Shown: positions 29,150 to 49,468 of the stretch, in pieces | How the letters are laid out: every line of letters begins with the position of its first letter | How positions within the stretch are numbered: position 1 is the stretch's first letter | Virus record (IMG/VR): IMGVR_UViG_3300050343_000191 | Coordinates: 1-64,000 of that record | Length of the DNA: 64,000 nucleotides | Direction: 5' to 3' (one strand) | Notes under the pieces: model-generated | What the model was told of the DNA's origin: nothing | Database searches by the model: none | Seen by the model: only the letters and a program-made list of their open reading frames with translations | Made by a program: the position numbers and the translations under genes

Positions 29150-29270
29150 GATAAAAAAGTAAGATCATCAGGGAAATGATGGTTTTACTATTCCTGTATC
29201 ACCCTTAGATACAGGTATGAAAGACGTGATTTAGACACCCTATAGGTCTTGGTTTGCGGGGTGTTACGAA
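29150..29270 (-). ncRNA. Structured psbA leader, probable PhotoRC-II-type cis-regulatory RNA
   Basis: About 160-nt leader with CCTGTATC/GATACAGG and CATCA/TGATG hairpins and AAACCAAGACCTATAGGGTGTCTAAA; position and look match my recollection of phage psbA leader motifs. Confidence 0.6.
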
Positions 29271-29307
29271 CAGTTAAGAAATGTGTTGGTTTCTTAACCT
29301 CTCGACT

Positions 29308-36904: not shown

Positions 36905-37581
36905 CAGTCAATTTCAATAAAAGGATTAAGTCCAACAGAGTTCATACATTCTTCATACTGTCTGACATAGTTGTGTTGATATAAAGTTGGTTTATCTAAT
37001 TTGAAAGAACAAATAAGTTCTTTAAATGAAGACTGCATAAAGTGAACCTCTTCAGCATTCTCAATGAGTGTAAGATAATCAAACACATTAAACTGCTTAT
37101 CGTTCATAACAATCTTGTAATCAGTCCTTACCTTCTCAAGATCAATAGAGAACCCACGCATCGAATCATCGTGAACAAAGACATACTTTTCTCTAGTAGG
37201 ATTTAATGCTTCAATAACTTCATTCTCTTTAGCAAGATCTCTCTCCAAATAGAACTCATCAAATCGAATAGAAAAATCAAGATCTGCCAACTTATAAAAT
37301 GCTTTGTCAAAAGCAAGTTCAGGCATTAGACCACTGAGATCAGAGAATCCAATCTTGATACAATCAACTCCAGTCTTTTGAATGTAAGAATCAATCTGTG
37401 CATCACTTTCAGATCCTATGACTTGAAAGTTATCAAGATCGCGATACATATACTGAACATTCTTTACGTTATGCTTGTAAGCAAACAGCGTGATTGCACC
37501 ATACTCTTTATAAAAATGACGGACCATACCATTGTTAATGATATGATCTCCAAGTCCTAGATGGTGATAGATATACTTCAT
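36904..37581 (-). CDS. Hypothetical protein, glycosyltransferase-like
   Basis: 225 aa starting HHLGLGDHI (GLGD motif), within glycan island. Confidence 0.6.
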   Translation of the reverse strand: MKYIYHHLGLGDHIINNGMVRHFYKEYGAITLFAYKHNVKNVQYMYRDLDNFQVIGSESDAQIDSYIQKTGVDCIKIGFSDLSGLMPELAFDKAFYKLADLDFSIRFDEFYLERDLAKENEVIEALNPTREKYVFVHDDSMRGFSIDLEKVRTDYKIVMNDKQFNVFDYLTLIENAEEVHFMQSSFKELICSFKLDKPTLYQHNYVRQYEECMNSVGLNPFIEID

Positions 37582-38345
37582 GAATTTAAATTAACGATTG
37601 TCTTCTGTGTATTTGCTCCCATAATCAAAGCAAGAAGACTTACATTTGAAAAACTATAGAGAAAGTGCTTACACCTTGAAAGAATGTAGACATTGGACAA
37701 TACTTCCTCATTGACCACATCTCTATCTGATAGTCTATGAAGAGGTGTACCATCTTCACTCATTCTAACTTCATTATCATATAAAAGCAAGTCTCCATAG
37801 CAGGACTTTAACTTATTAAAAAATTTACTATCGTCTGTCGCTAAAAAAATATTATCAATTAAATTAGATTCAAAGTAACTATCAATTTTATCAATTATGT
37901 TATCAATATTTGGTTCTTCAATCTCAGTATTTTTATCAGTTCCTCTTATCTGAACAGCAAGAGTTTTATCCGTAAGTCCAAGACCTTTATATTTGTTCTC
38001 AAATTTCAGCAACTTATCTTTTTTAATTGACAAAATATTTTGAAGGATCATGTTCTTCAGAATCAAATTACTAGGATCAGCAACTGTATGGGCAGAGTAT
38101 TCACTATGATGTAGTTCATTTGAAAAAAATCTTTCCAACCACCAAGATCCAGCATCATACTCGGACTCTCCTTTATGAATAGAATCAAATAATTCTAATG
38201 TCTGAGATTCCACTACTTGACAATCACAATCACCGTAAACAGAATAATGCTCTAACGCTATGTCAATAATGGCACAGACTATAGAGCAAAATCCTTTATA
38301 CGAATAGTTGTACTTGGGATCATTCAGTGTAATTTTAACAGTCAT
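37578..38345 (-). CDS. NodZ/O-fucosyltransferase-like protein
   Basis: AVQIRGTDK, IFLATDD, YILSRCKHFLYSFSNVS. Confidence 0.7.
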   Translation of the reverse strand: MTVKITLNDPKYNYSYKGFCSIVCAIIDIALEHYSVYGDCDCQVVESQTLELFDSIHKGESEYDAGSWWLERFFSNELHHSEYSAHTVADPSNLILKNMILQNILSIKKDKLLKFENKYKGLGLTDKTLAVQIRGTDKNTEIEEPNIDNIIDKIDSYFESNLIDNIFLATDDSKFFNKLKSCYGDLLLYDNEVRMSEDGTPLHRLSDRDVVNEEVLSNVYILSRCKHFLYSFSNVSLLALIMGANTQKTIVNLNS

Positions 38346-38686
38346 AATCCAGTATTTCTATCCAGATTATAAGAATATGCAGTTTTCAGTCCGCTTGGTT
38401 TGATATCATTCACAAGTATTCTTTCTCCATTTGGCATATCATATATGATTTTGTCATACTCAATTTGATTTTCCAAAAAACACTTTTCAGCAATACCCTT
38501 AAACTCACTATGTCTTGCAGTAATGATAAGAACATAATCAGTGTCAGTTATATTCTTATGAAAGAAGTCTTTAATTCCTGGAAGTAAAGTATCCTCTCCA
38601 CACTTATATCCATTATGAATAACAAGAGTACCGTCAAGATCAAAAATCCAAGTCTTATTCAGTCTTGAGAAAATGCTTGTGTCCAT
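38342..38686 (-). CDS. HAD-superfamily phosphatase
   Basis: WIFDLDGTL, ITAR, GERILVNDIKPSG. Confidence 0.8.
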   Translation of the reverse strand: MDTSIFSRLNKTWIFDLDGTLVIHNGYKCGEDTLLPGIKDFFHKNITDTDYVLIITARHSEFKGIAEKCFLENQIEYDKIIYDMPNGERILVNDIKPSGLKTAYSYNLDRNTGL

Positions 38687-40176
38687 AATTCACATCCTTT
38701 ATAAAAAGCGTACATTGCAGCATCAATATCTTCTTTAACATACCCAGTCAGAGATAACCAAATGGTAGCGTTTATTAGAAGCATTTCTTTTTTAGTCATC
38801 CCAGATCTACTAATTACGTAGTCTGACATTTGCTCATATCCATTGGACTTGATTTCAAGATCAACACAATCATTTAATATACTTACTTTGAATTGTTTAG
38901 AATTAATTGAATCGTAGTTTCCAGATACAGAATAATAAAGTTTTGCCCAGTCATATCTTCTATCACCATAAATCTTTGTACTACCAAAGGTTCCACGAGG
39001 ATCAATCAACCATACTTGACAAGTATCATCAACTAGTACATTGCTAAAGGTACAGTCTCCGTGAATAATATTATAAGTTTCAATATTACTGATAGCACTT
39101 ACAATATCTTCAAAATATGAAAGATTGTAGTAAGGATTAATACAGTCCTTTCCATTGATGTTAATAAAAGATCTATGAACCAAAGGAACTATTTTAGAAA
39201 CCTCATCAATCCTTTGATATGGTTTGGAAAAATATACTTGCATACAATCTCCAATATTACCTTCAGTAGAATCAATATTATGAAGTGTATCTAAAGTGTT
39301 ACAATAATTCTCAATTATATCATCTTTTTGATCACTAAGATTCCAAGGATGTTTCCCGTGAATTGTTTGAAGAATTAAAGGATCTGTTGCATATACTTTT
39401 GGAATCTTATCAAATTTTTCATCAACAAACTTATACCAATTCTTTTCATTTTCATGAACTGAAATATATTTCAAGTCAATACAACGTTTGTATACTAAGT
39501 CATCAATAATATCAACTTTATTAAAAAATCTATGATTTGGTCCTTGAGATATGAGTTCTTCATATCTATCTTTCTCACCAACTTCAAAACAATCGTGATT
39601 GTAGAATGTGGAAATATTTTCAGCAGTATATTCTTCAGTTAAAAATCCTCTAACTAAAGATTCTTTCGTTGATAATTTATCAAACTTAGATTTATCCCAA
39701 AAAACAAAGAAACCAGATACTCCACATTCTATAGATGATTCATTCACAAATTCACCATCATACTTCCACCTACAGTTAAATGTATTTGAAAGACCGACAA
39801 GAAGTTCAGTTTCAAGAACAAACTCTTGTTCCTTCTCAAAAAAGAGATCTGACCAAGTAACAATAAAAGGTTTTCCTTCAGGTATAAGGGAAACTGCTTT
39901 CGCAAGACCTCCAGCAGTTCCTGATTCCTCAGTTCTTACAATTTGATAGTCATAGTCACTACCAAAACAATCAAGATAAGAATCAAGAACATCAACTAAG
40001 TGATCTCCAATAATAATAATTTTCCTATCTTTGTACACTTTCATAGTGTTCAAAATCATCGGAATACCATTCACAGGAACTAAACACTTTGGTCTGTTCT
40101 GAACATAGTGTCCCATTCTGGTTCCTTTACCACCAGATTGAATGATTACATATTTAATTTCTTGTGATTGGATCAT
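38659..40176 (-). CDS. Sugar nucleotidyltransferase fused to a phosphotransferase/kinase-like domain
   Basis: N-terminal IQSGGKGTRMG...PKCLVPVNG; C-terminal IIHGDCTFSNVL...LIDPRG...YDWAKL. Confidence 0.8.
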   Translation of the reverse strand: MIQSQEIKYVIIQSGGKGTRMGHYVQNRPKCLVPVNGIPMILNTMKVYKDRKIIIIGDHLVDVLDSYLDCFGSDYDYQIVRTEESGTAGGLAKAVSLIPEGKPFIVTWSDLFFEKEQEFVLETELLVGLSNTFNCRWKYDGEFVNESSIECGVSGFFVFWDKSKFDKLSTKESLVRGFLTEEYTAENISTFYNHDCFEVGEKDRYEELISQGPNHRFFNKVDIIDDLVYKRCIDLKYISVHENEKNWYKFVDEKFDKIPKVYATDPLILQTIHGKHPWNLSDQKDDIIENYCNTLDTLHNIDSTEGNIGDCMQVYFSKPYQRIDEVSKIVPLVHRSFININGKDCINPYYNLSYFEDIVSAISNIETYNIIHGDCTFSNVLVDDTCQVWLIDPRGTFGSTKIYGDRRYDWAKLYYSVSGNYDSINSKQFKVSILNDCVDLEIKSNGYEQMSDYVISRSGMTKKEMLLINATIWLSLTGYVKEDIDAAMYAFYKGCELWTQAFSQD

Positions 40177-40745
40177 TTTAATTTACCGATACTTCCACCA
40201 GGATGATTAAAAACAAATTCTTCTAACTTAAGATTTCTTCTACTCGATATCTCACAAGCAACTGATTGCAAGAACACTGTAAATATTGCAATAGAAGAAG
40301 TTGGTACAATATTTAAATGATCCGCTTCATTATCAACTTGCAAATCAATATCCAGATAAGAATAGTTGCTAGATTCGTTACCTGGATTTGAATGTATTGT
40401 AATTAGTTTACAATTCTTCCTGTTCACACAACGGAGAAAATTAAGCAACTCTTCAGTATTACCACTCTTAGATATTGCTATCACGATATCAGTAGAAGAG
40501 ATAACTCCCATATCTCCGTGAACACTATCAACAGGATTTAAAAAGAAACATGGTAAACCTATAGAAGAAAAAGTTGATGTTGCTTTTGCTGCTACGTGCC
40601 CATTCTTTCCTACACCAGTGAAAAATATTTTACCAGTGCAAGTAAAAAGTAGATCTACAAGTTTATCTGCTTTTTGAGTGTCAAGACTATTATAAGATGT
40701 AGAGATAGAATCTAAGTGTTTTTTAAAGAACTCCGCTACAGACAT
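40173..40745 (-). CDS. SIS-domain sugar-phosphate isomerase (KdsD/KpsF-like, no CBS domain)
   Basis: FTGVGKNGHVAAK..STFSSIG...HGDMG...ISKSGNTEEL...PTSS...HPGG. Confidence 0.85.
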   Translation of the reverse strand: MSVAEFFKKHLDSISTSYNSLDTQKADKLVDLLFTCTGKIFFTGVGKNGHVAAKATSTFSSIGLPCFFLNPVDSVHGDMGVISSTDIVIAISKSGNTEELLNFLRCVNRKNCKLITIHSNPGNESSNYSYLDIDLQVDNEADHLNIVPTSSIAIFTVFLQSVACEISSRRNLKLEEFVFNHPGGSIGKLK

Positions 40746-41686
40746 TCTTTATACCACTTATATGTTGATTCGATTCCTTCTTTAAGACCAATCTTAGGTT
40801 CCCAACCAAGTGCTTTGATTTTACTTACATCTAAAAGTTTTCTTGGAGTACCATTGGGTTTATCAGTGTCCCAGATAATACCACCATTAAAACCAACTAC
40901 ATCAGAAATCATACTTGCAAGATCACCAATCGCAATATCTTCACCAGTTCCAACATTAAGAGATTGATCTCCATCATAGTTTACCATAGCAGCAAAACAA
41001 GCGTCTGCAAGGTCATCGACGTGAAGAAACTCTCTCTTAGGTGTTCCGTCACCCCAGAGACGAATTGACGGATTGAAAGGTCCACCGAGATCGTGATCAA
41101 TTACACCCTTACCATCATCAAACTTACGAATCAATGCAGGAAGAACATGAGATGATTCAGTATCAAAGTTATCATTTGGACCATAAAGATTCGTAGGCAT
41201 TAAAGAAATTGCATTGAATCCATACTGCTTACGATATGCCTGACACATCTTAATCCCAGCAATCTTTGCTATTGCGTAAGCATCATTCGTAGGTTCTAAG
41301 GGACCAGTCAAAAGATATTCTTCTTTGATTGGTTGTGGACATTCCTTAGGATATATGCAAGAAGATCCGAGAAACAAAAGTTTTTTAACACCAAACTTTC
41401 TAGCAGCATTAATGATATTTGATTGAATCATCAAATTATCATAGATGAAATGTGCAGGAAAATCCCTATTAGCAAGAATACCTCCTACTTTTGCAGCAGC
41501 AAGATAAACATATTCTGGTTCATTATTAGTAAAAAACCTTTCTACATCATCTTGCCGCCGAAGATCAAAATGACTTGAAGGTGTTGATAAGATATCCGTA
41601 TACCCCTTTCGATGGAGCATACGGACGATTGCTGATCCCACCATCCCAGTGTTACCAGCAACATAAACGCGACTACTACTGTCCAT
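40736..41686 (-). CDS. fcl: GDP-L-fucose synthase
   Basis: [54 protein letters not shown]; start set at ATG 41686. Confidence 0.95.
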
Positions 41687-42677
41687 AAAGCACCATGTCC
41701 TCAACTAATTCTTTAAACGAAATTTTAGGTTCCCAACCCAATTTCTCTTTTGCCTTAGTGGCATCACCCAATAAAGTTTCAACCTCAGCAGGTCGAAAAT
41801 ATTTAGGATCGACTTTGATGACTGGTTTCTTAGTATTCCAGTCATAACCAACTTCATTCATACCGTCACCCATCCATTCAATCTTCATACCGAAATAGGG
41901 TGCTGCTGCTTCAACAAAATCACGAACAGAATACTGAGTTCCAGTAGCGATAACATAATCATCTGGTTTATCTTGTTGAAGCATCAACCACATTGCTTCT
42001 ACAAAGTCTTTTGCATGACCCCAATCCCGTCGTGCATCAAGGTTTCCGAGAGATAATACATCTTGCTCCCCAACTGAAATTCTTGACAATCCTCGCGTAA
42101 TTTTTCTAGTGACAAAGGTTTCTCCTCGTCTGGGACTTTCGTGATTGAATAATATTCCAGAACTTGCGTGTAGTCCATACGACTCTCTATAGTTCTTGAC
42201 AATCCAGTATCCATAGAGTTTAGCCACACCGTAAGGCGAGCGTGGATAGAACGGAGTAGTTTCTCTTTGAGGAACTTCTTGAACAAGACCATACAACTCC
42301 GAAGTAGATGCTTGATAGATACGAACTTTGTCTTCCATACCTAGAAGACGAACTGCCTCAAGAATACGTAGGGTTCCAAGACCATCAGTATTGCCAGTAT
42401 ACTCAGGAGTTTCAAAAGAAACTTTTACGTGACTCTGAGCTCCGAGATTATAAATTTCATCAGGTTCAACTTTTTTGATAACACCAATAATATTAGTAGA
42501 ATCAGTTAAGTCGCCATAATGAAGAATAAGTTTATCATAAATGTGATCAATACGATGAGTATTGATCAGGGAAGAACGACGAACAATACCGTGAACTTCA
42601 TATCCTTTCTCAAGAAGAAGTTCTGCCAAGTATGATCCATCTTGTCCTGTTATACCCGTTATTAACGCTACAGACAT
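41676..42677 (-). CDS. gmd: GDP-mannose 4,6-dehydratase
   Basis: [45 protein letters not shown]. Confidence 0.97.
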
Positions 42678-42726
42678 AAAAATTGTAATCTCAATTCATT
42701 GTAAAACAAAAACGTGTAAATGTCAA

Positions 42727-43548
42727 TTACACCTCACAATTAGTAAAAGTGATTTTACCATTTCTGGTTGCCCAGATTGGATAATCTCTACCATATGTAT
42801 TCCATATTTTTGCCTGCGCTGGTCCCACAGGAACTCCACTCAAACCAGCAGCATCCCAAATGGTTTCAAAAGTATGATCCTCGTGGAAAGTAAAATCATC
42901 ATATTGAGAATAGATCTTCATCATCAATGAAAGAATTGATTGATCGTGCCTATGATCATTAAAGATTTGATGGTTCTCAAATTTTGAAGGACTATCATCA
43001 AGATAACGTCCCCCATCTTTGATGCAGAGTTCTTTCCACTTATCCACAATCTCAATCATAATAGGATTGTGTTTCATCAAGAAAATACCTGAGATGATTT
43101 GTCTAGTGACCATATGACTATCATCTGGTCCAGCAATATGTCTATAAGTGTCCATCTTAGTCCACTGAATCTCTGGGAGATTCAAACTAAAGAATACTCC
43201 ATTGTTTTCAAGACACTCATTATAATACTGCTCCATCATTTTTATTCCGTTCTTGTTGAGTTCACAACCACTATCAACATATAGAAGAACGTCACCTTCA
43301 GGAATGTTTCTTAATGCCTTACCAACAAAATAGGGTTTACAAGCGTAGTACCCATAAAATTTATCAGGCATACCAACTCTAGGCATCATCATTTTCTTTG
43401 CGTGATTTTCCCAGAAATCTCCAGTCAAATCATCCTCAGAAAACTGTTGGATACTTTTAAAGATACCAAAATTCTCTGCTTGTTTGATAATCCTATTCTT
43501 TCCAAGAGAAAAGTTCTTATCACCAAATAGTACTAAGTGTAGATTCAT
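42727..43548 (-). CDS. Putative glycosyltransferase
   Basis: KPYFV...LLYVDSGC...QWTKMD...HRHDQSILS. Confidence 0.65.
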   Translation of the reverse strand: MNLHLVLFGDKNFSLGKNRIIKQAENFGIFKSIQQFSEDDLTGDFWENHAKKMMMPRVGMPDKFYGYYACKPYFVGKALRNIPEGDVLLYVDSGCELNKNGIKMMEQYYNECLENNGVFFSLNLPEIQWTKMDTYRHIAGPDDSHMVTRQIISGIFLMKHNPIMIEIVDKWKELCIKDGGRYLDDSPSKFENHQIFNDHRHDQSILSLMMKIYSQYDDFTFHEDHTFETIWDAAGLSGVPVGPAQAKIWNTYGRDYPIWATRNGKITFTNCEV

Positions 43549-43550
43549 AC

Positions 43551-43577
43551 AAAAAAGGATGGTCTTTCAACCATCCT
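43551..43577 (-). terminator. Intrinsic terminator directly upstream of a start codon
   Basis: AGGATGGT/ACCATCCT stem plus T6, 2 nt before the ATG at 43548. Confidence 0.75.
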
Positions 43578-43760
43578 ACCATAGGTCTTTACATGCACGC
43601 CACTTGTTCTTTGACAGGAAACAAGAAACCTGGCGGGAGTAACCCATCCGCACCACCTCGTTTTAGGAACGAGGAAACCAAAAAGGGTCTAATGACTCCA
43701 CCACCTAGTTTTTAAAACTAGGAAACTTCGGGATTGAAGGGGATCCTTCACCGACCAGGG
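43578..43760 (-). ncRNA. Multi-hairpin cis-regulatory RNA, manA/wcaG-motif-like
   Basis: Three GTTTC-hairpin-GTGGYG units with compensatory stem changes; lies upstream of gmd/fcl(wcaG). Confidence 0.7.
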
Positions 43761-44042
43761 CTAGTTTTGAGACGATACCGAGTCTGTAACATAACAAGGA
43801 ACACCATCTGGATCTAACCATTTAGGATATTCTGGGTCTTCAATAGCAAGAAGCAGCTGATCTCCATTATCAAACAAATAGATGTCAGAGTACTTCTTAG
43901 TATATTCATTTGCTTTCTGCAAACGAAAATCTGGATTACCATTGAGTTGAATATAACCTCTCTGCACAAAACGATAAGGAAACCTCTCGTGAATGACAGT
44001 AGTCTTTGTTGAAGCAACAGACTTAGGATCTAGATCGTTCAT
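43761..44042 (-). CDS. Hypothetical protein
   Basis: 93 aa ORF, ATGA-coupled to the upstream gene. Confidence 0.65.
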   Translation of the reverse strand: MNDLDPKSVASTKTTVIHERFPYRFVQRGYIQLNGNPDFRLQKANEYTKKYSDIYLFDNGDQLLLAIEDPEYPKWLDPDGVPCYVTDSVSSQN

Positions 44043-44945: not shown

Positions 44946-44974
44946 ATTATAAGGTTTTATCTATATGTAGTCAA
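44946..44974 (-). promoter_or_regulatory. Sigma70-type promoter
   Basis: TTGACT-17-TATAAT. Confidence 0.7.
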
Positions 44975-46792: not shown

Positions 46793-46864
46793 TGGGCGAA
46801 GAGGGGATCGAACCCCCGACAATCTCCGTGTAAAGGAGGCACTCTACCGCTGAGTTATTCGCCC
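46793..46864 (-). tRNA. tRNA-Val(TAC)
   Basis: GGGCGAA/TTCGCCC acceptor, TTTACAC loop, GGTTCGATC T-arm. Confidence 0.92.
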
Positions 46865-47040
46865 GTATCCTTATATTCTAACATATACTCTACCGTATTT
46901 GCAACATCATCCATTGCAGTACGAAGTTCTTTCTGCGCTCCAGAGTATTGTTCTATTTTTGTGACACCATTCTTAAACTCTTCACATAAAGTCCATCGCC
47001 ACTGATGCATACTTTTGGAATACCAAAGATTAATCTTCAT
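46855..47040 (-). CDS. Hypothetical protein
   Basis: 61 aa MKINLWYSKSMHQWRWTL. Confidence 0.6.
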   Translation of the reverse strand: MKINLWYSKSMHQWRWTLCEEFKNGVTKIEQYSGAQKELRTAMDDVANTVEYMLEYKDTGE

Positions 47041-47248
47041 TAGATAACTCAGATTCTAACATATCTAGTTTACTCTGCAACTTCCCAATTTCACAAACAA
47101 GATGCATATGTTCATTTTCCATATTTTCTAATCGATATTGAAGTCTTTCAATTAATTCATATAAATTAGAACAACTTGCCACATTTTGTTCTCCTTTATC
47201 AGAATCTTTATAAAACCATTTAAGAAGTCTTTTAGCTTTCTTTTTCAT
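47030..47248 (-). CDS. Hypothetical coiled-coil protein
   Basis: 72 aa with heptad pattern. Confidence 0.6.
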   Translation of the reverse strand: MKKKAKRLLKWFYKDSDKGEQNVASCSNLYELIERLQYRLENMENEHMHLVCEIGKLQSKLDMLESELSNED

Positions 47249-47272
47249 AAAAAAGGGAAACTTATGTTTCCC
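47249..47272 (-). terminator. pstS terminator
   Basis: GGGAAAC-ATAA-GTTTCCC plus T run. Confidence 0.7.
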
Positions 47273-47284
47273 ATTATACTATTT

Positions 47285-48253
47285 TCAATTAATATTGTCA
47301 ACAGCAGCAAGTGCTTTCTGACGAAGATCCTCAGGCAGTGGAACATAACCAAGACCATCAGACATTGCCTGTGATTTCTCACTCAACATATAACGAAGGG
47401 TCTCCTTCACACCAGTCTTGGATTCAGGGTATGCTAGGACCCATGTCAGAGAGACAATAGGATATGCATTGGAACCAGTAGGATTAGCATCAGCACCACG
47501 AAGTTGGTCGTCAAGGACGATTCTTGACAGACCTGCTGCAGATGTTTCAGCATTTGCTGTGACATAGTTACCTGCTTTGTTTTGCAGGGATACTTGTTGG
47601 AAACTATTACTGTTGACAACAAAACCATAGTTCAGGTAACCAATAGCACCTTCAAGTTGTTTGATACCAGCAGCAACGCCACTGTTACCTTTACCGCCAA
47701 TACCAGCAGGCCATGCTACTGCTTTACCAGTGCCGACATTCTTCTTCCACTCAGGAGAGAATGCAGACAGGGAGTTAGTGAAACCTTTTGTGGTGCCACT
47801 ACCATCAGAACGCCATATAGGAACAATAGTTTTACTATCACACCCGAAGGTAGACCAGTTAGTAATCTTACCAAGATATACATCAGCAAGTTGTGTCTGT
47901 GTCATCTTGACTTCACAACCAGGATAGTTATATGCAGGAACAATAGCACCACCAGTCATAGGAATATGGACCATTGGAATTTTCTGCTTCTCATCACTTA
48001 CAGCACCATCACTGGCACCAAAGTCAACTGTATTAGCAATATACTGACGGACACCAGCACCACTACCAACTGCTTGATAGTTTACTTGATTACCAGTCTC
48101 TTGATTATATCTTTGAAACCATGAAGTATAAAGTGGAGCAGGGAATGTAGCACCTGCTGCATCAAGTCTGAATGTAGTATTATCCGATCCACTACCACAA
48201 GCGACCATCATAGGAGTGACAGCAGCGATTGATGCGATTGCTTTGAGTTTCAT
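47285..48253 (-). CDS. pstS: Phosphate-binding protein of the ABC transporter
   Basis: Lipobox MVAC, AGATFPAP, YQAVGSGAG, DFGASD, RSDGSGTT, YPIVSLTW. Confidence 0.97.
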   Translation of the reverse strand: MKLKAIASIAAVTPMMVACGSGSDNTTFRLDAAGATFPAPLYTSWFQRYNQETGNQVNYQAVGSGAGVRQYIANTVDFGASDGAVSDEKQKIPMVHIPMTGGAIVPAYNYPGCEVKMTQTQLADVYLGKITNWSTFGCDSKTIVPIWRSDGSGTTKGFTNSLSAFSPEWKKNVGTGKAVAWPAGIGGKGNSGVAAGIKQLEGAIGYLNYGFVVNSNSFQQVSLQNKAGNYVTANAETSAAGLSRIVLDDQLRGADANPTGSNAYPIVSLTWVLAYPESKTGVKETLRYMLSEKSQAMSDGLGYVPLPEDLRQKALAAVDNIN

Positions 48254-48282
48254 TTTAGTAAAAAAACTTTTTTATATAGAGA

Positions 48283-48301
48283 CAATTAATACAATTTTAA
48301 T
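48283..48301 (-). promoter_or_regulatory. Putative Pho box
   Basis: ATTAAAAT-TGT-ATTAATTG, an 11-bp-spaced TTAA repeat upstream of pstS. Confidence 0.45.
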
Positions 48302-48305
48302 CATT

Positions 48306-48332
48306 AAAAAGGGGACCCTCGTCAGGATCCCC
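48306..48332 (-). terminator. Intrinsic terminator
   Basis: GGGGATCC/GGGTCCCC stem plus T5. Confidence 0.7.
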
Positions 48333-48363
48333 GAACATCTAGATGTTTATTTTATATGAGCGA

Positions 48364-48735
48364 TCAGAAGTTGTACTTGACGCCCAACTTACCTGCATAA
48401 CCACGGTCAAGATCTTCGTCGCCTGAGCCAACGAAAGATACTTCACCATATGCACCAAGTGCGTCCGTCAGTGCAAGACCAAGACCTGCTTTGCCTGAAG
48501 GAACGGTGTCGCTGTCGCCACCATCGGGAGTCAGTACAGTAGCACCGCCCTGCACGTAGAATGAACCAGCTTCACTGAATGCGCCTTCGTACCCTACGTG
48601 AACGTCCGTTCCAGCGCCGTTGTACTCCGATCCAGTCCAACCGGCATTGGTTTCTACGTTGACGTAGGGACCTGCAAGGGCAGCGCCAGCAGAAGCGAAC
48701 AGAGCAGCAGAGGCTGCGAATACAGATTTAAACAT
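48364..48735 (-). CDS. Secreted outer-membrane beta-strand protein
   Basis: Signal peptide, alternating beta pattern, C-terminal GVKYNF ending in Phe. Confidence 0.75.
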   Translation of the reverse strand: MFKSVFAASAALFASAGAALAGPYVNVETNAGWTGSEYNGAGTDVHVGYEGAFSEAGSFYVQGGATVLTPDGGDSDTVPSGKAGLGLALTDALGAYGEVSFVGSGDEDLDRGYAGKLGVKYNF

Positions 48736-48889
48736 TTTTGTTACCTTTAGTTACTTGCGGAATGGATACCCGCAGATGAATAGGGACTCGACTGTCCCGT
48801 GTTAAGTATTACCTTTTGTTACTTTAATTGTCTGAAAGACAAAAGGTTTATTATTTAGGTGTAAATACTCTTACGATCTTTACACCAAG

Positions 48890-48960
48890 AGCGGAATACC
48901 AGAATCGAACTGGTGACGAAAGGTTGGAAACCTTTAGTTTTGCCTCTAAACTAATTCCGC
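48890..48960 (-). tRNA. tRNA-Gly(TCC)
   Basis: GCGGAAT/ATTCCGC acceptor, TTTCCAA loop, U discriminator. Confidence 0.9.
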
Positions 48961-49037
48961 AAGTGGTAGGGAATTACTTCCCTTACACATCCTTCACACG
49001 GATGAGAGTAGTATATGACAACCGTTGTAGATTGTCA

Positions 49038-49109
49038 AGCCTCTGACAAGATTTGAACTTGCGACCTGAGCTTTACAAAAGCCCTGCTCTACCACTGAGC
49101 TACGGAGGC
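49038..49109 (-). tRNA. tRNA-Thr(TGT)
   Basis: GGGCT-TTTGTAA-AGCTC anticodon arm, GTTCAAAT T loop. Confidence 0.9.
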
Positions 49110-49111
49110 AA

Positions 49112-49184
49112 CTCCTCCACCTGGACTCGAACCAGGGACAGGGTGATTAACAGTCACCTGCTCTACCAACTGAGCTATAGAGGA
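49112..49184 (-). tRNA. tRNA-Asn(GTT)
   Basis: TCCTCTA/TGGAGGA acceptor, CTGTTAA loop. Confidence 0.93.
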
Positions 49185-49375
49185 TTGTTTGCCTTTTCTT
49201 CCTTATTGGTTTTGAAGTAGAGTTTATAGTATCTCTTCTTCATTTCATTAATAGCATTCATATCTTCTTCAAAACCCATATATTTGAGCATTTGAGAAGA
49301 ACCTTCCAACTCACTAATGAGTCTAAGGATGTTGACTGCTACTGGTGGTTGTCCACCAAAATCATATTTGCCCAT
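49175..49375 (-). CDS. Hypothetical protein
   Basis: 66 aa; stop codon lies within the first 10 nt of tRNA-Asn. Confidence 0.6.
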   Translation of the reverse strand: MGKYDFGGQPPVAVNILRLISELEGSSQMLKYMGFEEDMNAINEMKKRYYKLYFKTNKEEKANNPL

Positions 49376-49394
49376 AAGGAATAAAAAAGGACAA

Positions 49395-49468
49395 CGACTC
49401 GTGTAGGATTTGAACCTACGACCGACTGCTTAGAAGGCAGTTGCTCTATCCAGCTGAGCTAACGAGTC
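49395..49468 (-). tRNA. tRNA-Arg(TCT)
   Basis: GACTCGT/ACGAGTC acceptor, CTTCTAA loop. Confidence 0.93.

What the first reader, a model, noticed from the sequence alone, without database searches (positions are those of the whole stretch)
43551..43760. Triple-repeat structured RNA plus terminator gating the fucose operon (riboswitch candidate)
Seen on the minus strand: three units, GTTTCCTAGTT-ttaaa-AACTAGGTGGTG (43699-43726), GTTTCCTCGTT-cctaa-AACGAGGTGGTG (43651-43678) and GTTTCTTGTT-tcctgtcaaag-AACAAGTGGCG (43598-43629). Stems covary (TAG/CTA, TCG/CGA, TTG/CAA) while the flanks stay constant. A strong terminator follows 2 nt before the start of the GT-gmd-fcl block. Established: manA and wcaG motifs are orphan riboswitch candidates of cyanophages with no known ligand. 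Inference: attenuation of the glycan operon by a sugar-nucleotide or protein signal.
Basis: partly seen in the sequence, partly recalled or inferred. Interest (0 to 1): 0.72.

Follow-up and report, generated by a model that had tools for sequence, protein, structure and literature searches.

The report
wcaG RNA before a phage terminator
The repeats are a textbook copy of the known but still function-less cyanophage "wcaG RNA", here sitting inside a longer four-hairpin RNA that ends at a strong terminator just before a promoter-less sugar-transferase-like gene, so it is a known element in an informative setting, not a new kind of thing.

Summary
All three units sit at the stated coordinates (3 matches against 0.14 expected). 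A 9-bp terminator plus T-run ends 2 nt before the ATG at 43548.

Rfam identifies 43589-43682(-) as wcaG RNA (RF01761) at 93.7 bits against a cut-off of 42. Units 2 and 3 are its P1 and P3. Unit 1 belongs to a 5' extension outside the Rfam model (h0 hairpin, CUGGUCGG, hairpin X, unit 1). Its hairpins covary across about 110 viral contigs.

The riboswitch reading is only partly supported:
- gmd-fcl has its own near-consensus promoter (42726-42698), so only the 273-aa GT-like gene is gated.
- In 61-65 of 83 relatives with a terminator, a sigma70-type promoter is nested in that terminator, so the downstream gene is independent of the RNA.
- This lineage has lost that promoter through a ~30-nt deletion. 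The gene stays under purifying selection (dN/dS 0.03-0.10), so read-through must occur.
- No cognate-specific antiterminator pairing was found.
- Downstream genes are diverse, and tRNA genes follow the RNA in 13 of 111 loci.

Best guess: a cis-acting element that sets read-through at the terminator, with an unknown effector that is more likely polymerase or protein than a metabolite. It is a new member of a known orphan family. Interest is moderate to low.

The parts
44946..44974 (-). Sigma70-type promoter-like site TTGACT-17-TATAAT. It probably starts the transcription unit orf56-orf222-orf93-RNA.
   Evidence: 11 of 12 matches; sequence read
43761..44042 (-). 93-aa ORF of family phrog_481, function unknown. 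Its last codons overlap the first RNA hairpin.
   Evidence: A homologue lies on the same strand within 1 kb upstream of the wcaG core in 73 of 103 loci.
43770..43785 (-). Hairpin h0 (AGAC-UCGGUAUC-GUCU), an H-type module hairpin outside the Rfam model.
   Evidence: Sequence. In relatives the 4-bp stem covaries (AGUC/GACU, AGAC/GUCU, CGUC/GACG, CGUG/CACG). 368 of 400 cells are paired against 140-166 when the partner is slid.
43751..43758 (-). CUGGUCGG box, an extra copy of the UGGYG-type box.
43735..43750 (-). Hairpin X (UGAAGG-AUCC-CCUUCA), the counterpart of P2 in the upstream module.
   Evidence: RNAalifold consensus; weak second Rfam alignment
43699..43726 (-). It lies outside the Rfam hit.
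   Evidence: Relatives chosen by their flanks alone show a 7-bp stem with CG/UA and AU/GC swaps (31 instances).
43685..43698 (-). Linker 'a', GAGUCAUUAGACCC. Together with the UGGUG box that closes unit 1 it reads UGGUG-GAGUC..GACCC. The sequence is conserved and there is no covariation.
43589..43682 (-). Canonical wcaG RNA (RF01761), full length.
   Evidence: 93.7 bits against a gathering score of 42, E = 1e-18
43651..43678 (-).
   Evidence: alignment
43598..43629 (-). The loop CCUG (43618-43615) pairs with CAGG (43632-43629) to form a pseudoknot.
   Evidence: For the pseudoknot, all four pairs form in 72 of 86 loci, with five covarying types.
43578..43597 (-). Conserved 3' tail UGCAUGUAAAGACCUAUGGU.
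43551..43577 (-). Intrinsic terminator: 9-bp stem, GAAA loop, hairpin -12.6 kcal/mol, followed by the T-run.
   Evidence: An equivalent terminator lies 11-23 nt after the last unit in 83 of 111 distinct loci.
42727..43548 (-). 273-aa ORF, glycosyltransferase-like by language-model features only. It has no promoter of its own in this lineage.
   Evidence: The ~30-nt deletion of the -10 box and leader is shown against L076, L051, L099 and L100. dN/dS is 0.03-0.10.
42698..42726 (-). Sigma70-type promoter-like site TTGACA-17-TACAAT between the 273-aa ORF and gmd.
   Evidence: 11 of 12 matches; sequence read
41676..42677 (-). GDP-mannose 4,6-dehydratase gene.
   Evidence: Pfam PF16363, E = 6e-154
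40736..41704 (-). NAD-dependent epimerase of the GDP-fucose synthase type.
   Evidence: Pfam PF01370, E = 3e-66. The S-SKS1 homologue is annotated as GDP-L-fucose synthase.

Best explanation
Shown: the element is a wcaG-class RNA (RF01761). It is the 3' half of an RNA of about 235 nt with four main hairpins (43785-43551, minus strand). That RNA starts at the stop codon of a conserved small gene (phrog_481) and ends in a strong intrinsic terminator.

Inferred transcription: a sigma70-type promoter at 44974-44946 transcribes it early, as the tail of the unit orf56-orf222-orf93.

Inferred mechanism: the folded RNA acts in cis on the polymerase that has just made it and sets how many polymerases pass the terminator 20 nt downstream. 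That read-through is the only visible source of transcripts for the promoter-less 273-aa glycosyltransferase-like gene, and an extra source for gmd-fcl.

The effector is unknown. Direct polymerase or protein binding, in the manner of HK022 put, Bacillus EAR or lambda nut, looks more likely to me than a small metabolite. The repeated UGGYG boxes and the variable number of modules are the reason.
For: - Identity: Rfam gives 93.7 bits against a cut-off of 42. Eleven of the 13 relatives tested also pass the cut-off.
- Extension: the H hairpin and unit 1 covary in relatives chosen without reference to their stems. RNAalifold recovers every hairpin.
- Link to the terminator: a terminator lies 11-23 nt after the last unit in 83 of 111 distinct loci.
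- Need for read-through here: there is no promoter between the terminator and the ATG. About 30 nt carrying the -10 box and leader are missing compared with four orthologous loci. All six contigs of this lineage keep an intact 273-aa gene, with dN/dS of 0.03-0.10.
- Functional coupling: downstream genes are enriched for nucleotide-sugar enzymes. 36 of 108 are epimerases or dehydratases, 11 are cytidylyltransferases and 10 are this GT-like gene.
- Protein binding: Weinberg 2010 already noted that the duplicated UGGYG may bind a dimeric protein.
- Analogy, from my own knowledge: the epsC/EAR RNA from the same 2010 survey was later shown to be a processive antiterminator of a polysaccharide operon.
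Against: - In 61-65 of 83 relatives with a terminator, a sigma70-type promoter is nested in it, with the -35 box in the hairpin loop and the -10 box just after the T-run. In Syn9 a perfect TTGACA-17-TATAAT lies between the RNA and hli. In those phages the downstream gene does not need the RNA.
- No alternative pairing is specific to each locus. Cognate terminator arms bind the RNA no better than arms from other loci (rank 0.47, p = 0.32). In the window the best pairing is -7.1 kcal/mol against -12.6 for the hairpin.
- The terminator is of ordinary strength (16th weakest of 83).
- In 13 of 111 loci a tRNA gene, not a protein gene, follows directly.
- There is no expression evidence. Metatranscriptome contigs cover the upstream genes, but none covers 42572-43643. 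That gap could equally mean the island is absent from those strains.
Confidence: 0.45

Rival explanations
1. Stable RNA acting in trans. The array of modules is released as a discrete small RNA. Its 3' end is made by the terminator, or by RNase P where a tRNA follows. It binds several copies of a phage or host protein or another macromolecule. The terminator is simply its end, and the 273-aa gene lives on leak-through.
For: - The number of modules varies from 2 to about 6. UGGYG boxes repeat, and H-type hairpin loops of the form NYGGANN repeat.
- The 3' end is defined by a terminator in 83 of 111 loci, or by an abutting tRNA in 13 of 111. In L039 the wcaG and tRNA-Leu matches overlap by 10 nt.
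- A promoter for the next gene lies after the RNA in most loci.
- The most constant neighbour is the upstream phrog_481 gene, present in 73 of 103 loci, not any downstream gene.
- The RNA always lies just downstream of the phage tRNA cluster. From my own knowledge, this recalls the T4 stable RNAs C and D encoded in its tRNA region.
Against: - No promoter directly upstream of the RNA is evident in the window.
- No binding partner was identified. CsrA is absent from the phage and reported absent from cyanobacteria (PMC8136920).
- The window's h0 loop lacks the GGA motif.
- The model does not explain the enrichment of glycan genes downstream.
Confidence: 0.28
2. Metabolite riboswitch, the reader's and Weinberg's proposal. 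The wcaG core binds a small molecule such as a sugar nucleotide, and binding decides whether the terminator forms.
For: - Junctions and loops are highly conserved, there are three hairpins, and a pseudoknot covaries.
- A terminator follows, and glycan genes lie downstream.
- Tandem modules are known for some riboswitches.
- The G-rich 5' arms of the terminators can pair with the invariant 3' strand of P2 in many loci.
Against: - In the papers I could search, no ligand has been reported in the 16 years since 2010.
- Downstream genes share no obvious metabolite and include tRNAs, hli, porin-like and tail-fibre-like genes.
- A promoter separates the RNA from the downstream gene in most loci.
- The pairing with the terminator arms is not cognate-specific, and it is weak in this window.
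- The RNA is a linear chain of hairpins with a variable number of modules and no enclosing helix.
Confidence: 0.15
3. Passive 3'-end or DNA-level element. The hairpins only protect the upstream mRNA from 3' exonucleases. Alternatively, the repeated roughly 50-nt modules plus the terminator/promoter cassette serve as recombination sites that shuffle gene cassettes, as proposed for PeSLs (composite promoter-terminator motifs) in T4-like phages.
For: - The element lies at the border of a hypervariable region. Different gene cassettes sit downstream, and small ORFs are inserted between modules in about 30 loci.
- The composite terminator/promoter matches the PeSL concept (PMC4122927).
Against: - Near-invariant single-stranded sequences, compensatory changes in stems and a covarying pseudoknot point to selection on a specific RNA fold, beyond what a stabiliser or a recombination site needs.
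- No other PeSL-like cassette was found in the window.
Confidence: 0.1

Closest known systems
wcaG RNA motif (Rfam RF01761; Weinberg et al. 2010, PMC2864571)
   Same: - Full-length match at 93.7 bits, with P1, P2, P3 and two UGGYG boxes.
- Found in a T4-like cyanophage, upstream of exopolysaccharide-type genes.
- Their raw alignment already holds H-hairpin variants and tandem copies in the flanks.
   Different: - The window carries about 100 nt of extra 5' modules (h0, CUGGUCGG, hairpin X, unit 1). Against the Rfam model these score only 23.6 bits.
- In this lineage the promoter nested in the terminator has been lost.
PeSL composite terminator/early-promoter cassettes of T4-like phages (Arbiol 2010, PMC2839356; Comeau 2014, PMC4122927)
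   Same: In most relatives the hairpin after wcaG is a terminator whose loop holds a -35 box (TTGCAT, TTGACA or TTTACA), with TATAAT just after the T-run. It lies at the edge of a variable region.
   Different: - In the window only the terminator half remains.
- The cassette is tied to one specific structured RNA and is not scattered through the region. No other copy was found in the window.
Processive antitermination RNAs: HK022 put and Bacillus EAR (the epsC motif). Cited from my own knowledge, not tested here.
   Same: - A cis-encoded multi-hairpin RNA lies directly upstream of terminators.
- It is associated with polysaccharide gene clusters.
- No alternative-pairing expression platform is needed.
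   Different: - I know of no sequence or structural homology.
- No polymerase binding has been shown.
- Most relatives also carry a promoter after the terminator.
CsrB/RsmZ-type protein sponges
   Same: - Hairpins repeat in variable number and are followed by a terminator.
- H-type loops in relatives read ACGGAUG, ACGGAGA or AUGGAGA. This resembles the CsrA/RsmE site (recalled from memory).
   Different: - There is no CsrA in the phage, and none is reported in cyanobacteria.
- The window's own H loop (UCGGUAUC) has no GGA.
- In the U-type units the conserved sequence is in the flanks, not the loops.
T4 stable RNAs C and D of the tRNA region (cited from my own knowledge)
   Same: A small structured RNA of unknown function encoded next to, and sometimes abutting, the phage tRNA genes.
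   Different: Homology was not tested. In this window the RNA lies 3 kb from the nearest tRNA.

Membership tests
wcaG RNA (RF01761) | Score at or above the Rfam gathering threshold over the full model | tested here: met
   93.7 bits against 42, model positions 1-98 of 98, E = 1e-18
wcaG RNA (RF01761) | Three hairpins P1-P3 with two conserved UGGYG boxes | tested here: met
   alignment. UGGUG follows P1 and UGGCG follows P3. The boxes are described in the Weinberg supplement.
wcaG RNA (RF01761) | Found in a T4-like cyanophage or marine sequence, ahead of exopolysaccharide or high-light genes | tested here: met
   The best DNA matches are Synechococcus phages. PhotoRC-II and tRNAs are in the window. 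GT-like, gmd and fcl genes lie downstream.
wcaG RNA (RF01761), the upstream module set 43690-43787 | Score at or above the gathering threshold | tested here: not met
   23.6 bits, E = 0.029. It resembles the H-variant rows of the 2010 alignment, but I do not file it as a second wcaG copy.
Terminator-type riboswitch | Binds a small-molecule ligand | not testable with these tools
   No ligand is reported in the library.
Terminator-type riboswitch | Mutually exclusive antiterminator and terminator pairing | tested here: inconclusive
   G-rich 5' arms can pair with the 3' strand of P2 in many loci, but cognate arms do no better than non-cognate ones (rank 0.47, p = 0.32). In the window the figures are -7.1 against -12.6 kcal/mol.
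Terminator-type riboswitch | No promoter between the RNA and the regulated gene | tested here: inconclusive
   The feature holds for the window's 273-aa gene. It fails for gmd (promoter at 42726-42698) and in 61-65 of 83 relatives.
PeSL terminator/promoter cassette | Stem-loop terminator fused to an early sigma70-type promoter | tested here: not met
   The window keeps the terminator but lacks the -10 box and leader. Relatives meet the feature.
CsrB/RsmZ-type sponge | A cognate CsrA-family protein in phage or host | tested here: not met
   PF02599 is absent from the 231-kb phage genome, while the search did find it in control genomes. Cyanobacteria are reported to lack CsrA (PMC8136920). Host genomes were not searched directly.
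Type III toxin-antitoxin (ToxI-like repeats, terminator, toxin) | Identical tandem repeats followed by a ToxN-type endoribonuclease gene | tested here: not met
   The units differ in their stems, and the downstream genes are sugar enzymes.
Processive antiterminator RNA (put/EAR-like) | The RNA makes the polymerase resistant to downstream terminators | not testable with these tools
   Only the position fits: directly upstream of a terminator and ahead of a glycan cluster.

The most novel reading that the evidence does not exclude
wcaG is not a 5'-UTR metabolite riboswitch. It is the core of a longer modular RNA (2 to about 6 modules of roughly 50 nt) that forms the 3' end of the phrog_481 / tRNA-region transcription unit of cyanomyoviruses. 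It is bounded by a terminator with a nested early promoter. It works by binding polymerase or a protein, either to permit read-through or as a stable RNA. The Rfam model captures only half of it.
Probability: 0.45. Interest if true: 0.6.

Novelty: new member of a known kind. Interest (0 to 1): 0.35.

Why it matters
wcaG is one of the orphan riboswitch candidates that has gone unexplained since 2010, and it is common in ocean cyanophages.

The comparative picture changes which experiment makes sense:
- In most phages a promoter sits between the RNA and the gene it was thought to control.
- The RNA is longer and more modular than the curated model.
- Its steadiest neighbour is an upstream small gene, not a downstream one.

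This window is a natural variant in which the promoter has been deleted and a selected gene depends on passing the terminator. That makes it a clean template for testing whether wcaG controls read-through, and by what effector.

Tried and rejected
1. CsrA-sponge idea. H-type loops look like CsrA sites, but the phage has no CsrA and cyanobacteria are reported to lack it. The window's own loop also lacks GGA. Rejected as stated.
2. Scan of genome contigs for the wcaG core. It returned only chance matches in GC-rich genomes, so it gave no host handle and no evidence for or against cellular copies.
3. Metatranscriptomes. These are Logan contigs only and at low depth. The upstream genes are covered, nothing covers 42572-43643, and one 454 contig carries a relative's H-plus-unit module. 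This does not settle whether termination occurs.
4. My first rule-based module annotators missed many H modules, including the window's own. I use only the flank-defined counts.
5. Loose promoter count. The criteria hit 41% of control segments. I replaced it with the position-specific count (65 observed against 25 in shuffles).
6. Fold of the 93-aa phrog_481 protein (pLDDT 75). There was no significant PDB or AFDB match, and the weak PC4/Lsm-like rows are not evidence.
7. A weakened terminator in the promoter-less lineage. Not seen: -12.6 kcal/mol against a median of -13.9.
8. CRISPR-like or ToxI-like repeat array. Rejected because the stems differ between units and the 'spacers' are conserved across loci.
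9. Coding potential. Only short ORFs on the plus strand overlap the RNA.

Full report
**Observation**

On the minus strand the window reads, 5' to 3':
- the end of a 93-aa ORF (stop at 43763-43761);
- three units of the form GUUUC-hairpin-GUGGYG at 43726-43699, 43678-43651 and 43629-43598;
- a 9-bp GC-containing hairpin at 43577-43556 and a T-run;
- two nucleotides later, the ATG (43548) of a 273-aa ORF.

The unit pattern occurs three times in 64 kb, against 0.14 expected. None of 100 shuffles reaches three. The stretch folds better than all 200 shuffles (z = -3.2).

**Identity**

Rfam places a full-length wcaG RNA (RF01761) at 43589-43682(-), with 93.7 bits against a gathering score of 42. 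It is the only copy in the 231-kb phage genome.

I also find a 4-bp pseudoknot between CAGG (43632-43629) and the P3 loop CCUG (43618-43615). In 72 of 86 distinct relatives all four pairs form, with five different covarying combinations.

The window is a T4-like cyanomyovirus. It carries PhotoRC-II and a tRNA cluster, and its best DNA matches are Synechococcus phages, S-SKS1 being the nearest listed.

**What lies outside the Rfam model**

Unit 1 is not part of the hit. I collected 119 IMG/VR loci that share the wcaG core, which make 111 distinct sequences. Eleven of the 13 loci tested pass the Rfam cut-off.

Upstream of the core many loci carry further modules of about 50 nt. Each module is a hairpin, then a (C/G)UGGU(G/C)G box, then a small second hairpin or a ..GACCC tail. 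The main hairpins come in two kinds:
- H-type: a 4-bp stem with a 7-nt loop, usually NYGGANN.

I chose instances by loop and flank sequence only, so that pairing was not a selection criterion.
- The H stem is paired in 368 of 400 cells, against 140-166 when the partner is slid. It shows compensatory swaps (U-A 72 / A-U 18; A-U 67 / C-G 17).
- The upstream U unit has seven pairs with C-G/U-A and A-U/G-C swaps.

The window has one of each kind: h0 at 43785-43770 (overlapping the last codons of the 93-aa ORF), CUGGUCGG, hairpin X at 43750-43735, then unit 1 and the linker GAGUCAUUAGACCC. RNAalifold on seven loci of this architecture recovers every hairpin.

The transcript-level element is therefore about 235 nt (43785-43551), with four main hairpins. 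It is not a triple repeat.

The weak second Rfam hit (23.6 bits, 43690-43787) reflects this upstream set. It fails the family cut-off, so I do not call it a second wcaG.

The 2010 raw alignment already contains H-type rows, and tandem copies appear in its flanks. Its supplement remarks that the duplicated UGGYG may bind a dimeric protein. The extension is therefore a refinement and not a discovery of a new class.

**The terminator and what follows it**

A strong intrinsic terminator lies 11-23 nt after the last unit in 83 of 111 distinct loci.

Its apex is itself conserved (GTTGCATAAAC, TTGACAACAA or TTTACAAGA), and the T-run is followed by TATAAT.
- In 65 of 83 loci a -10 box (at least 5 of 6 matches) starts 2-10 nt after the hairpin. 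Shuffles of the same bases give 25.
- In 61 of those, a -35-like hexamer sits 16-18 nt upstream, inside the hairpin loop.

This is the composite terminator/early-promoter arrangement described as PeSL in T4-like phages (PMC4122927). In Syn9 there is no terminator, but a perfect TTGACA-17-TATAAT lies between the RNA and the hli genes.

In most relatives, then, the gene after wcaG has its own promoter downstream of the RNA.

**This window is the exception**

Four loci carry an ortholog of the 273-aa gene: L076, L051, L099 and L100. They have the nested promoter and a leader of about 25 nt. The window and five contigs of its lineage lack about 30 nt. This leaves ..TTTTTG-TATGAAT.. with the ATG inside what was the -10 box.

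The gene is intact in all six contigs and evolves under strong purifying selection (dN/dS 0.03-0.10). It must therefore be expressed, and the only visible route is through the terminator.

The terminator is of ordinary strength (-12.6 kcal/mol; median of 83 is -13.9).

gmd is preceded by its own TTGACA-17-TACAAT site at 42726-42698. The terminator therefore gates the 273-aa gene and not the fucose genes as such.

The likely promoter for the RNA is TTGACT-17-TATAAT at 44974-44946, ahead of orf56-orf222-orf93. No promoter-like site lies directly upstream of the RNA.

**Neighbours**

- Downstream genes fall into many families: 36 of 108 are epimerases or dehydratases of several kinds, 11 are cytidylyltransferases and 10 are the GT-like gene. 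The rest include carbamoyltransferase, 2OG-oxygenase-like, porin-like and tail-fibre-like genes.
- In 13 of 111 loci a tRNA gene follows directly. In L039 the Rfam wcaG and tRNA matches overlap by 10 nt.
- The most constant neighbour is upstream. A phrog_481 homologue lies on the same strand within 1 kb in 73 of 103 loci.
- Where another small ORF appeared to be the upstream neighbour, it is in fact inserted between the H module and the U modules.
- The phrog_481 protein gives a moderate model (pLDDT 75) with no significant fold match.

**Mechanism**

A classic terminator riboswitch needs an alternative pairing.
- Terminator 5' arms pair with the upstream RNA somewhat better than their own shuffles do (mean z = -0.69). 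The partner is usually the invariant 3' strand of P2.
- However, arms from other loci pair just as well as the cognate arm (rank 0.47, p = 0.32).
- In the window the best alternative is -7.1 kcal/mol, against -12.6 for the hairpin.

This is inconclusive overall and negative for this window.

The CsrA-sponge reading of the GGA loops fails for lack of a CsrA. Metatranscriptome contigs do not resolve termination.

Weighing these points, I commit to a cis-acting read-through element with an unidentified effector, more likely polymerase or protein than metabolite. My confidence is 0.45. A stable trans-acting RNA is the main rival (0.28). A metabolite riboswitch stands at 0.15, and a passive or DNA-level role at 0.1.

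Steps that are shown:
- the identity, anatomy and covariation of the RNA;
- the terminator;
- the promoter layout;
- the deletion and the selection on the downstream gene.

Steps that are inferred:
- the transcription-unit boundaries;
- that read-through occurs;
- that the RNA influences it.

**Novelty and verdict**

It is not a new kind of element. Its value lies in the context, because it is a natural promoter-less configuration for testing what wcaG does. Interest is 0.35.

Noticed in passing
window 43761-44042 (-); 73 of 103 related loci: A small gene of family phrog_481 (conserved ..YxKWLDPDxVPCYV.. C-terminus) is the most constant neighbour of the wcaG module array, and its stop codon lies in or next to the first RNA hairpin. 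The AF2 model has four strands and two helices (pLDDT 75) and no significant fold match.
   Followed up: partly
L002, L007, L020, L058, L005, L011, L046 and about 25 others, roughly 60-350 nt upstream of the wcaG core: A small ORF (a 75-aa hydrophobic protein, or a 68-79-aa protein) is inserted between the H module and the U modules. Its ATG comes directly after the 'b' hairpin and its last codons lie inside the next hairpin stem. RNA modules therefore flank a coding cassette.
   Followed up: partly
L006, L027, L028, L029, L032, L039, L042, L048, L062, L087, L088, L110, L112: A tRNA gene (Gly-UCC, Leu-UAG or Met) starts right after the wcaG RNA. The intervening hairpin then lacks a good T-run. 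In L039 and L112 the variant P3 runs into tRNA-Leu.
   Followed up: partly
window 42698-42726 (-) and 44946-44974 (-): Two near-consensus sigma70-type promoter-like sites (11 of 12 matches each). One lies ahead of gmd and one ahead of the orf56-orf222-orf93 unit.
   Followed up: partly
window 29180-29276 (-): PhotoRC-II RNA (RF01717, 80.1 bits), another cyanophage cis-regulatory candidate from the same 2010 survey.
   Followed up: no
window 46793-49468 (-): A cluster of five tRNA genes on the same strand as the RNA, about 3 kb upstream. In the related loci tested, tRNA genes lie a few hundred nt to a few kb upstream of wcaG.
   Followed up: no
window 37578-40745 (-): The glycan cluster continues past fcl with a SIS-domain protein, a 505-aa nucleotidyltransferase-domain protein, a 114-aa protein with weak PHROG matches (phosphoheptose isomerase family, polynucleotide kinase family) and a FUT8-like fucosyltransferase-domain protein.
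   Followed up: no
L076 3825-4086 (+): An abiF RNA (RF03085) lies directly before a group I intron match, near that phage's tRNA cluster.
   Followed up: no
Read-laying run X4, contig over window 43692-43728: A 310-nt metatranscriptome contig matches unit 1. It then continues into a relative's H module (..CUGGUCGGGAUACCCCUC..). RNA from related module arrays is therefore present in marine RNA libraries.
   Followed up: no
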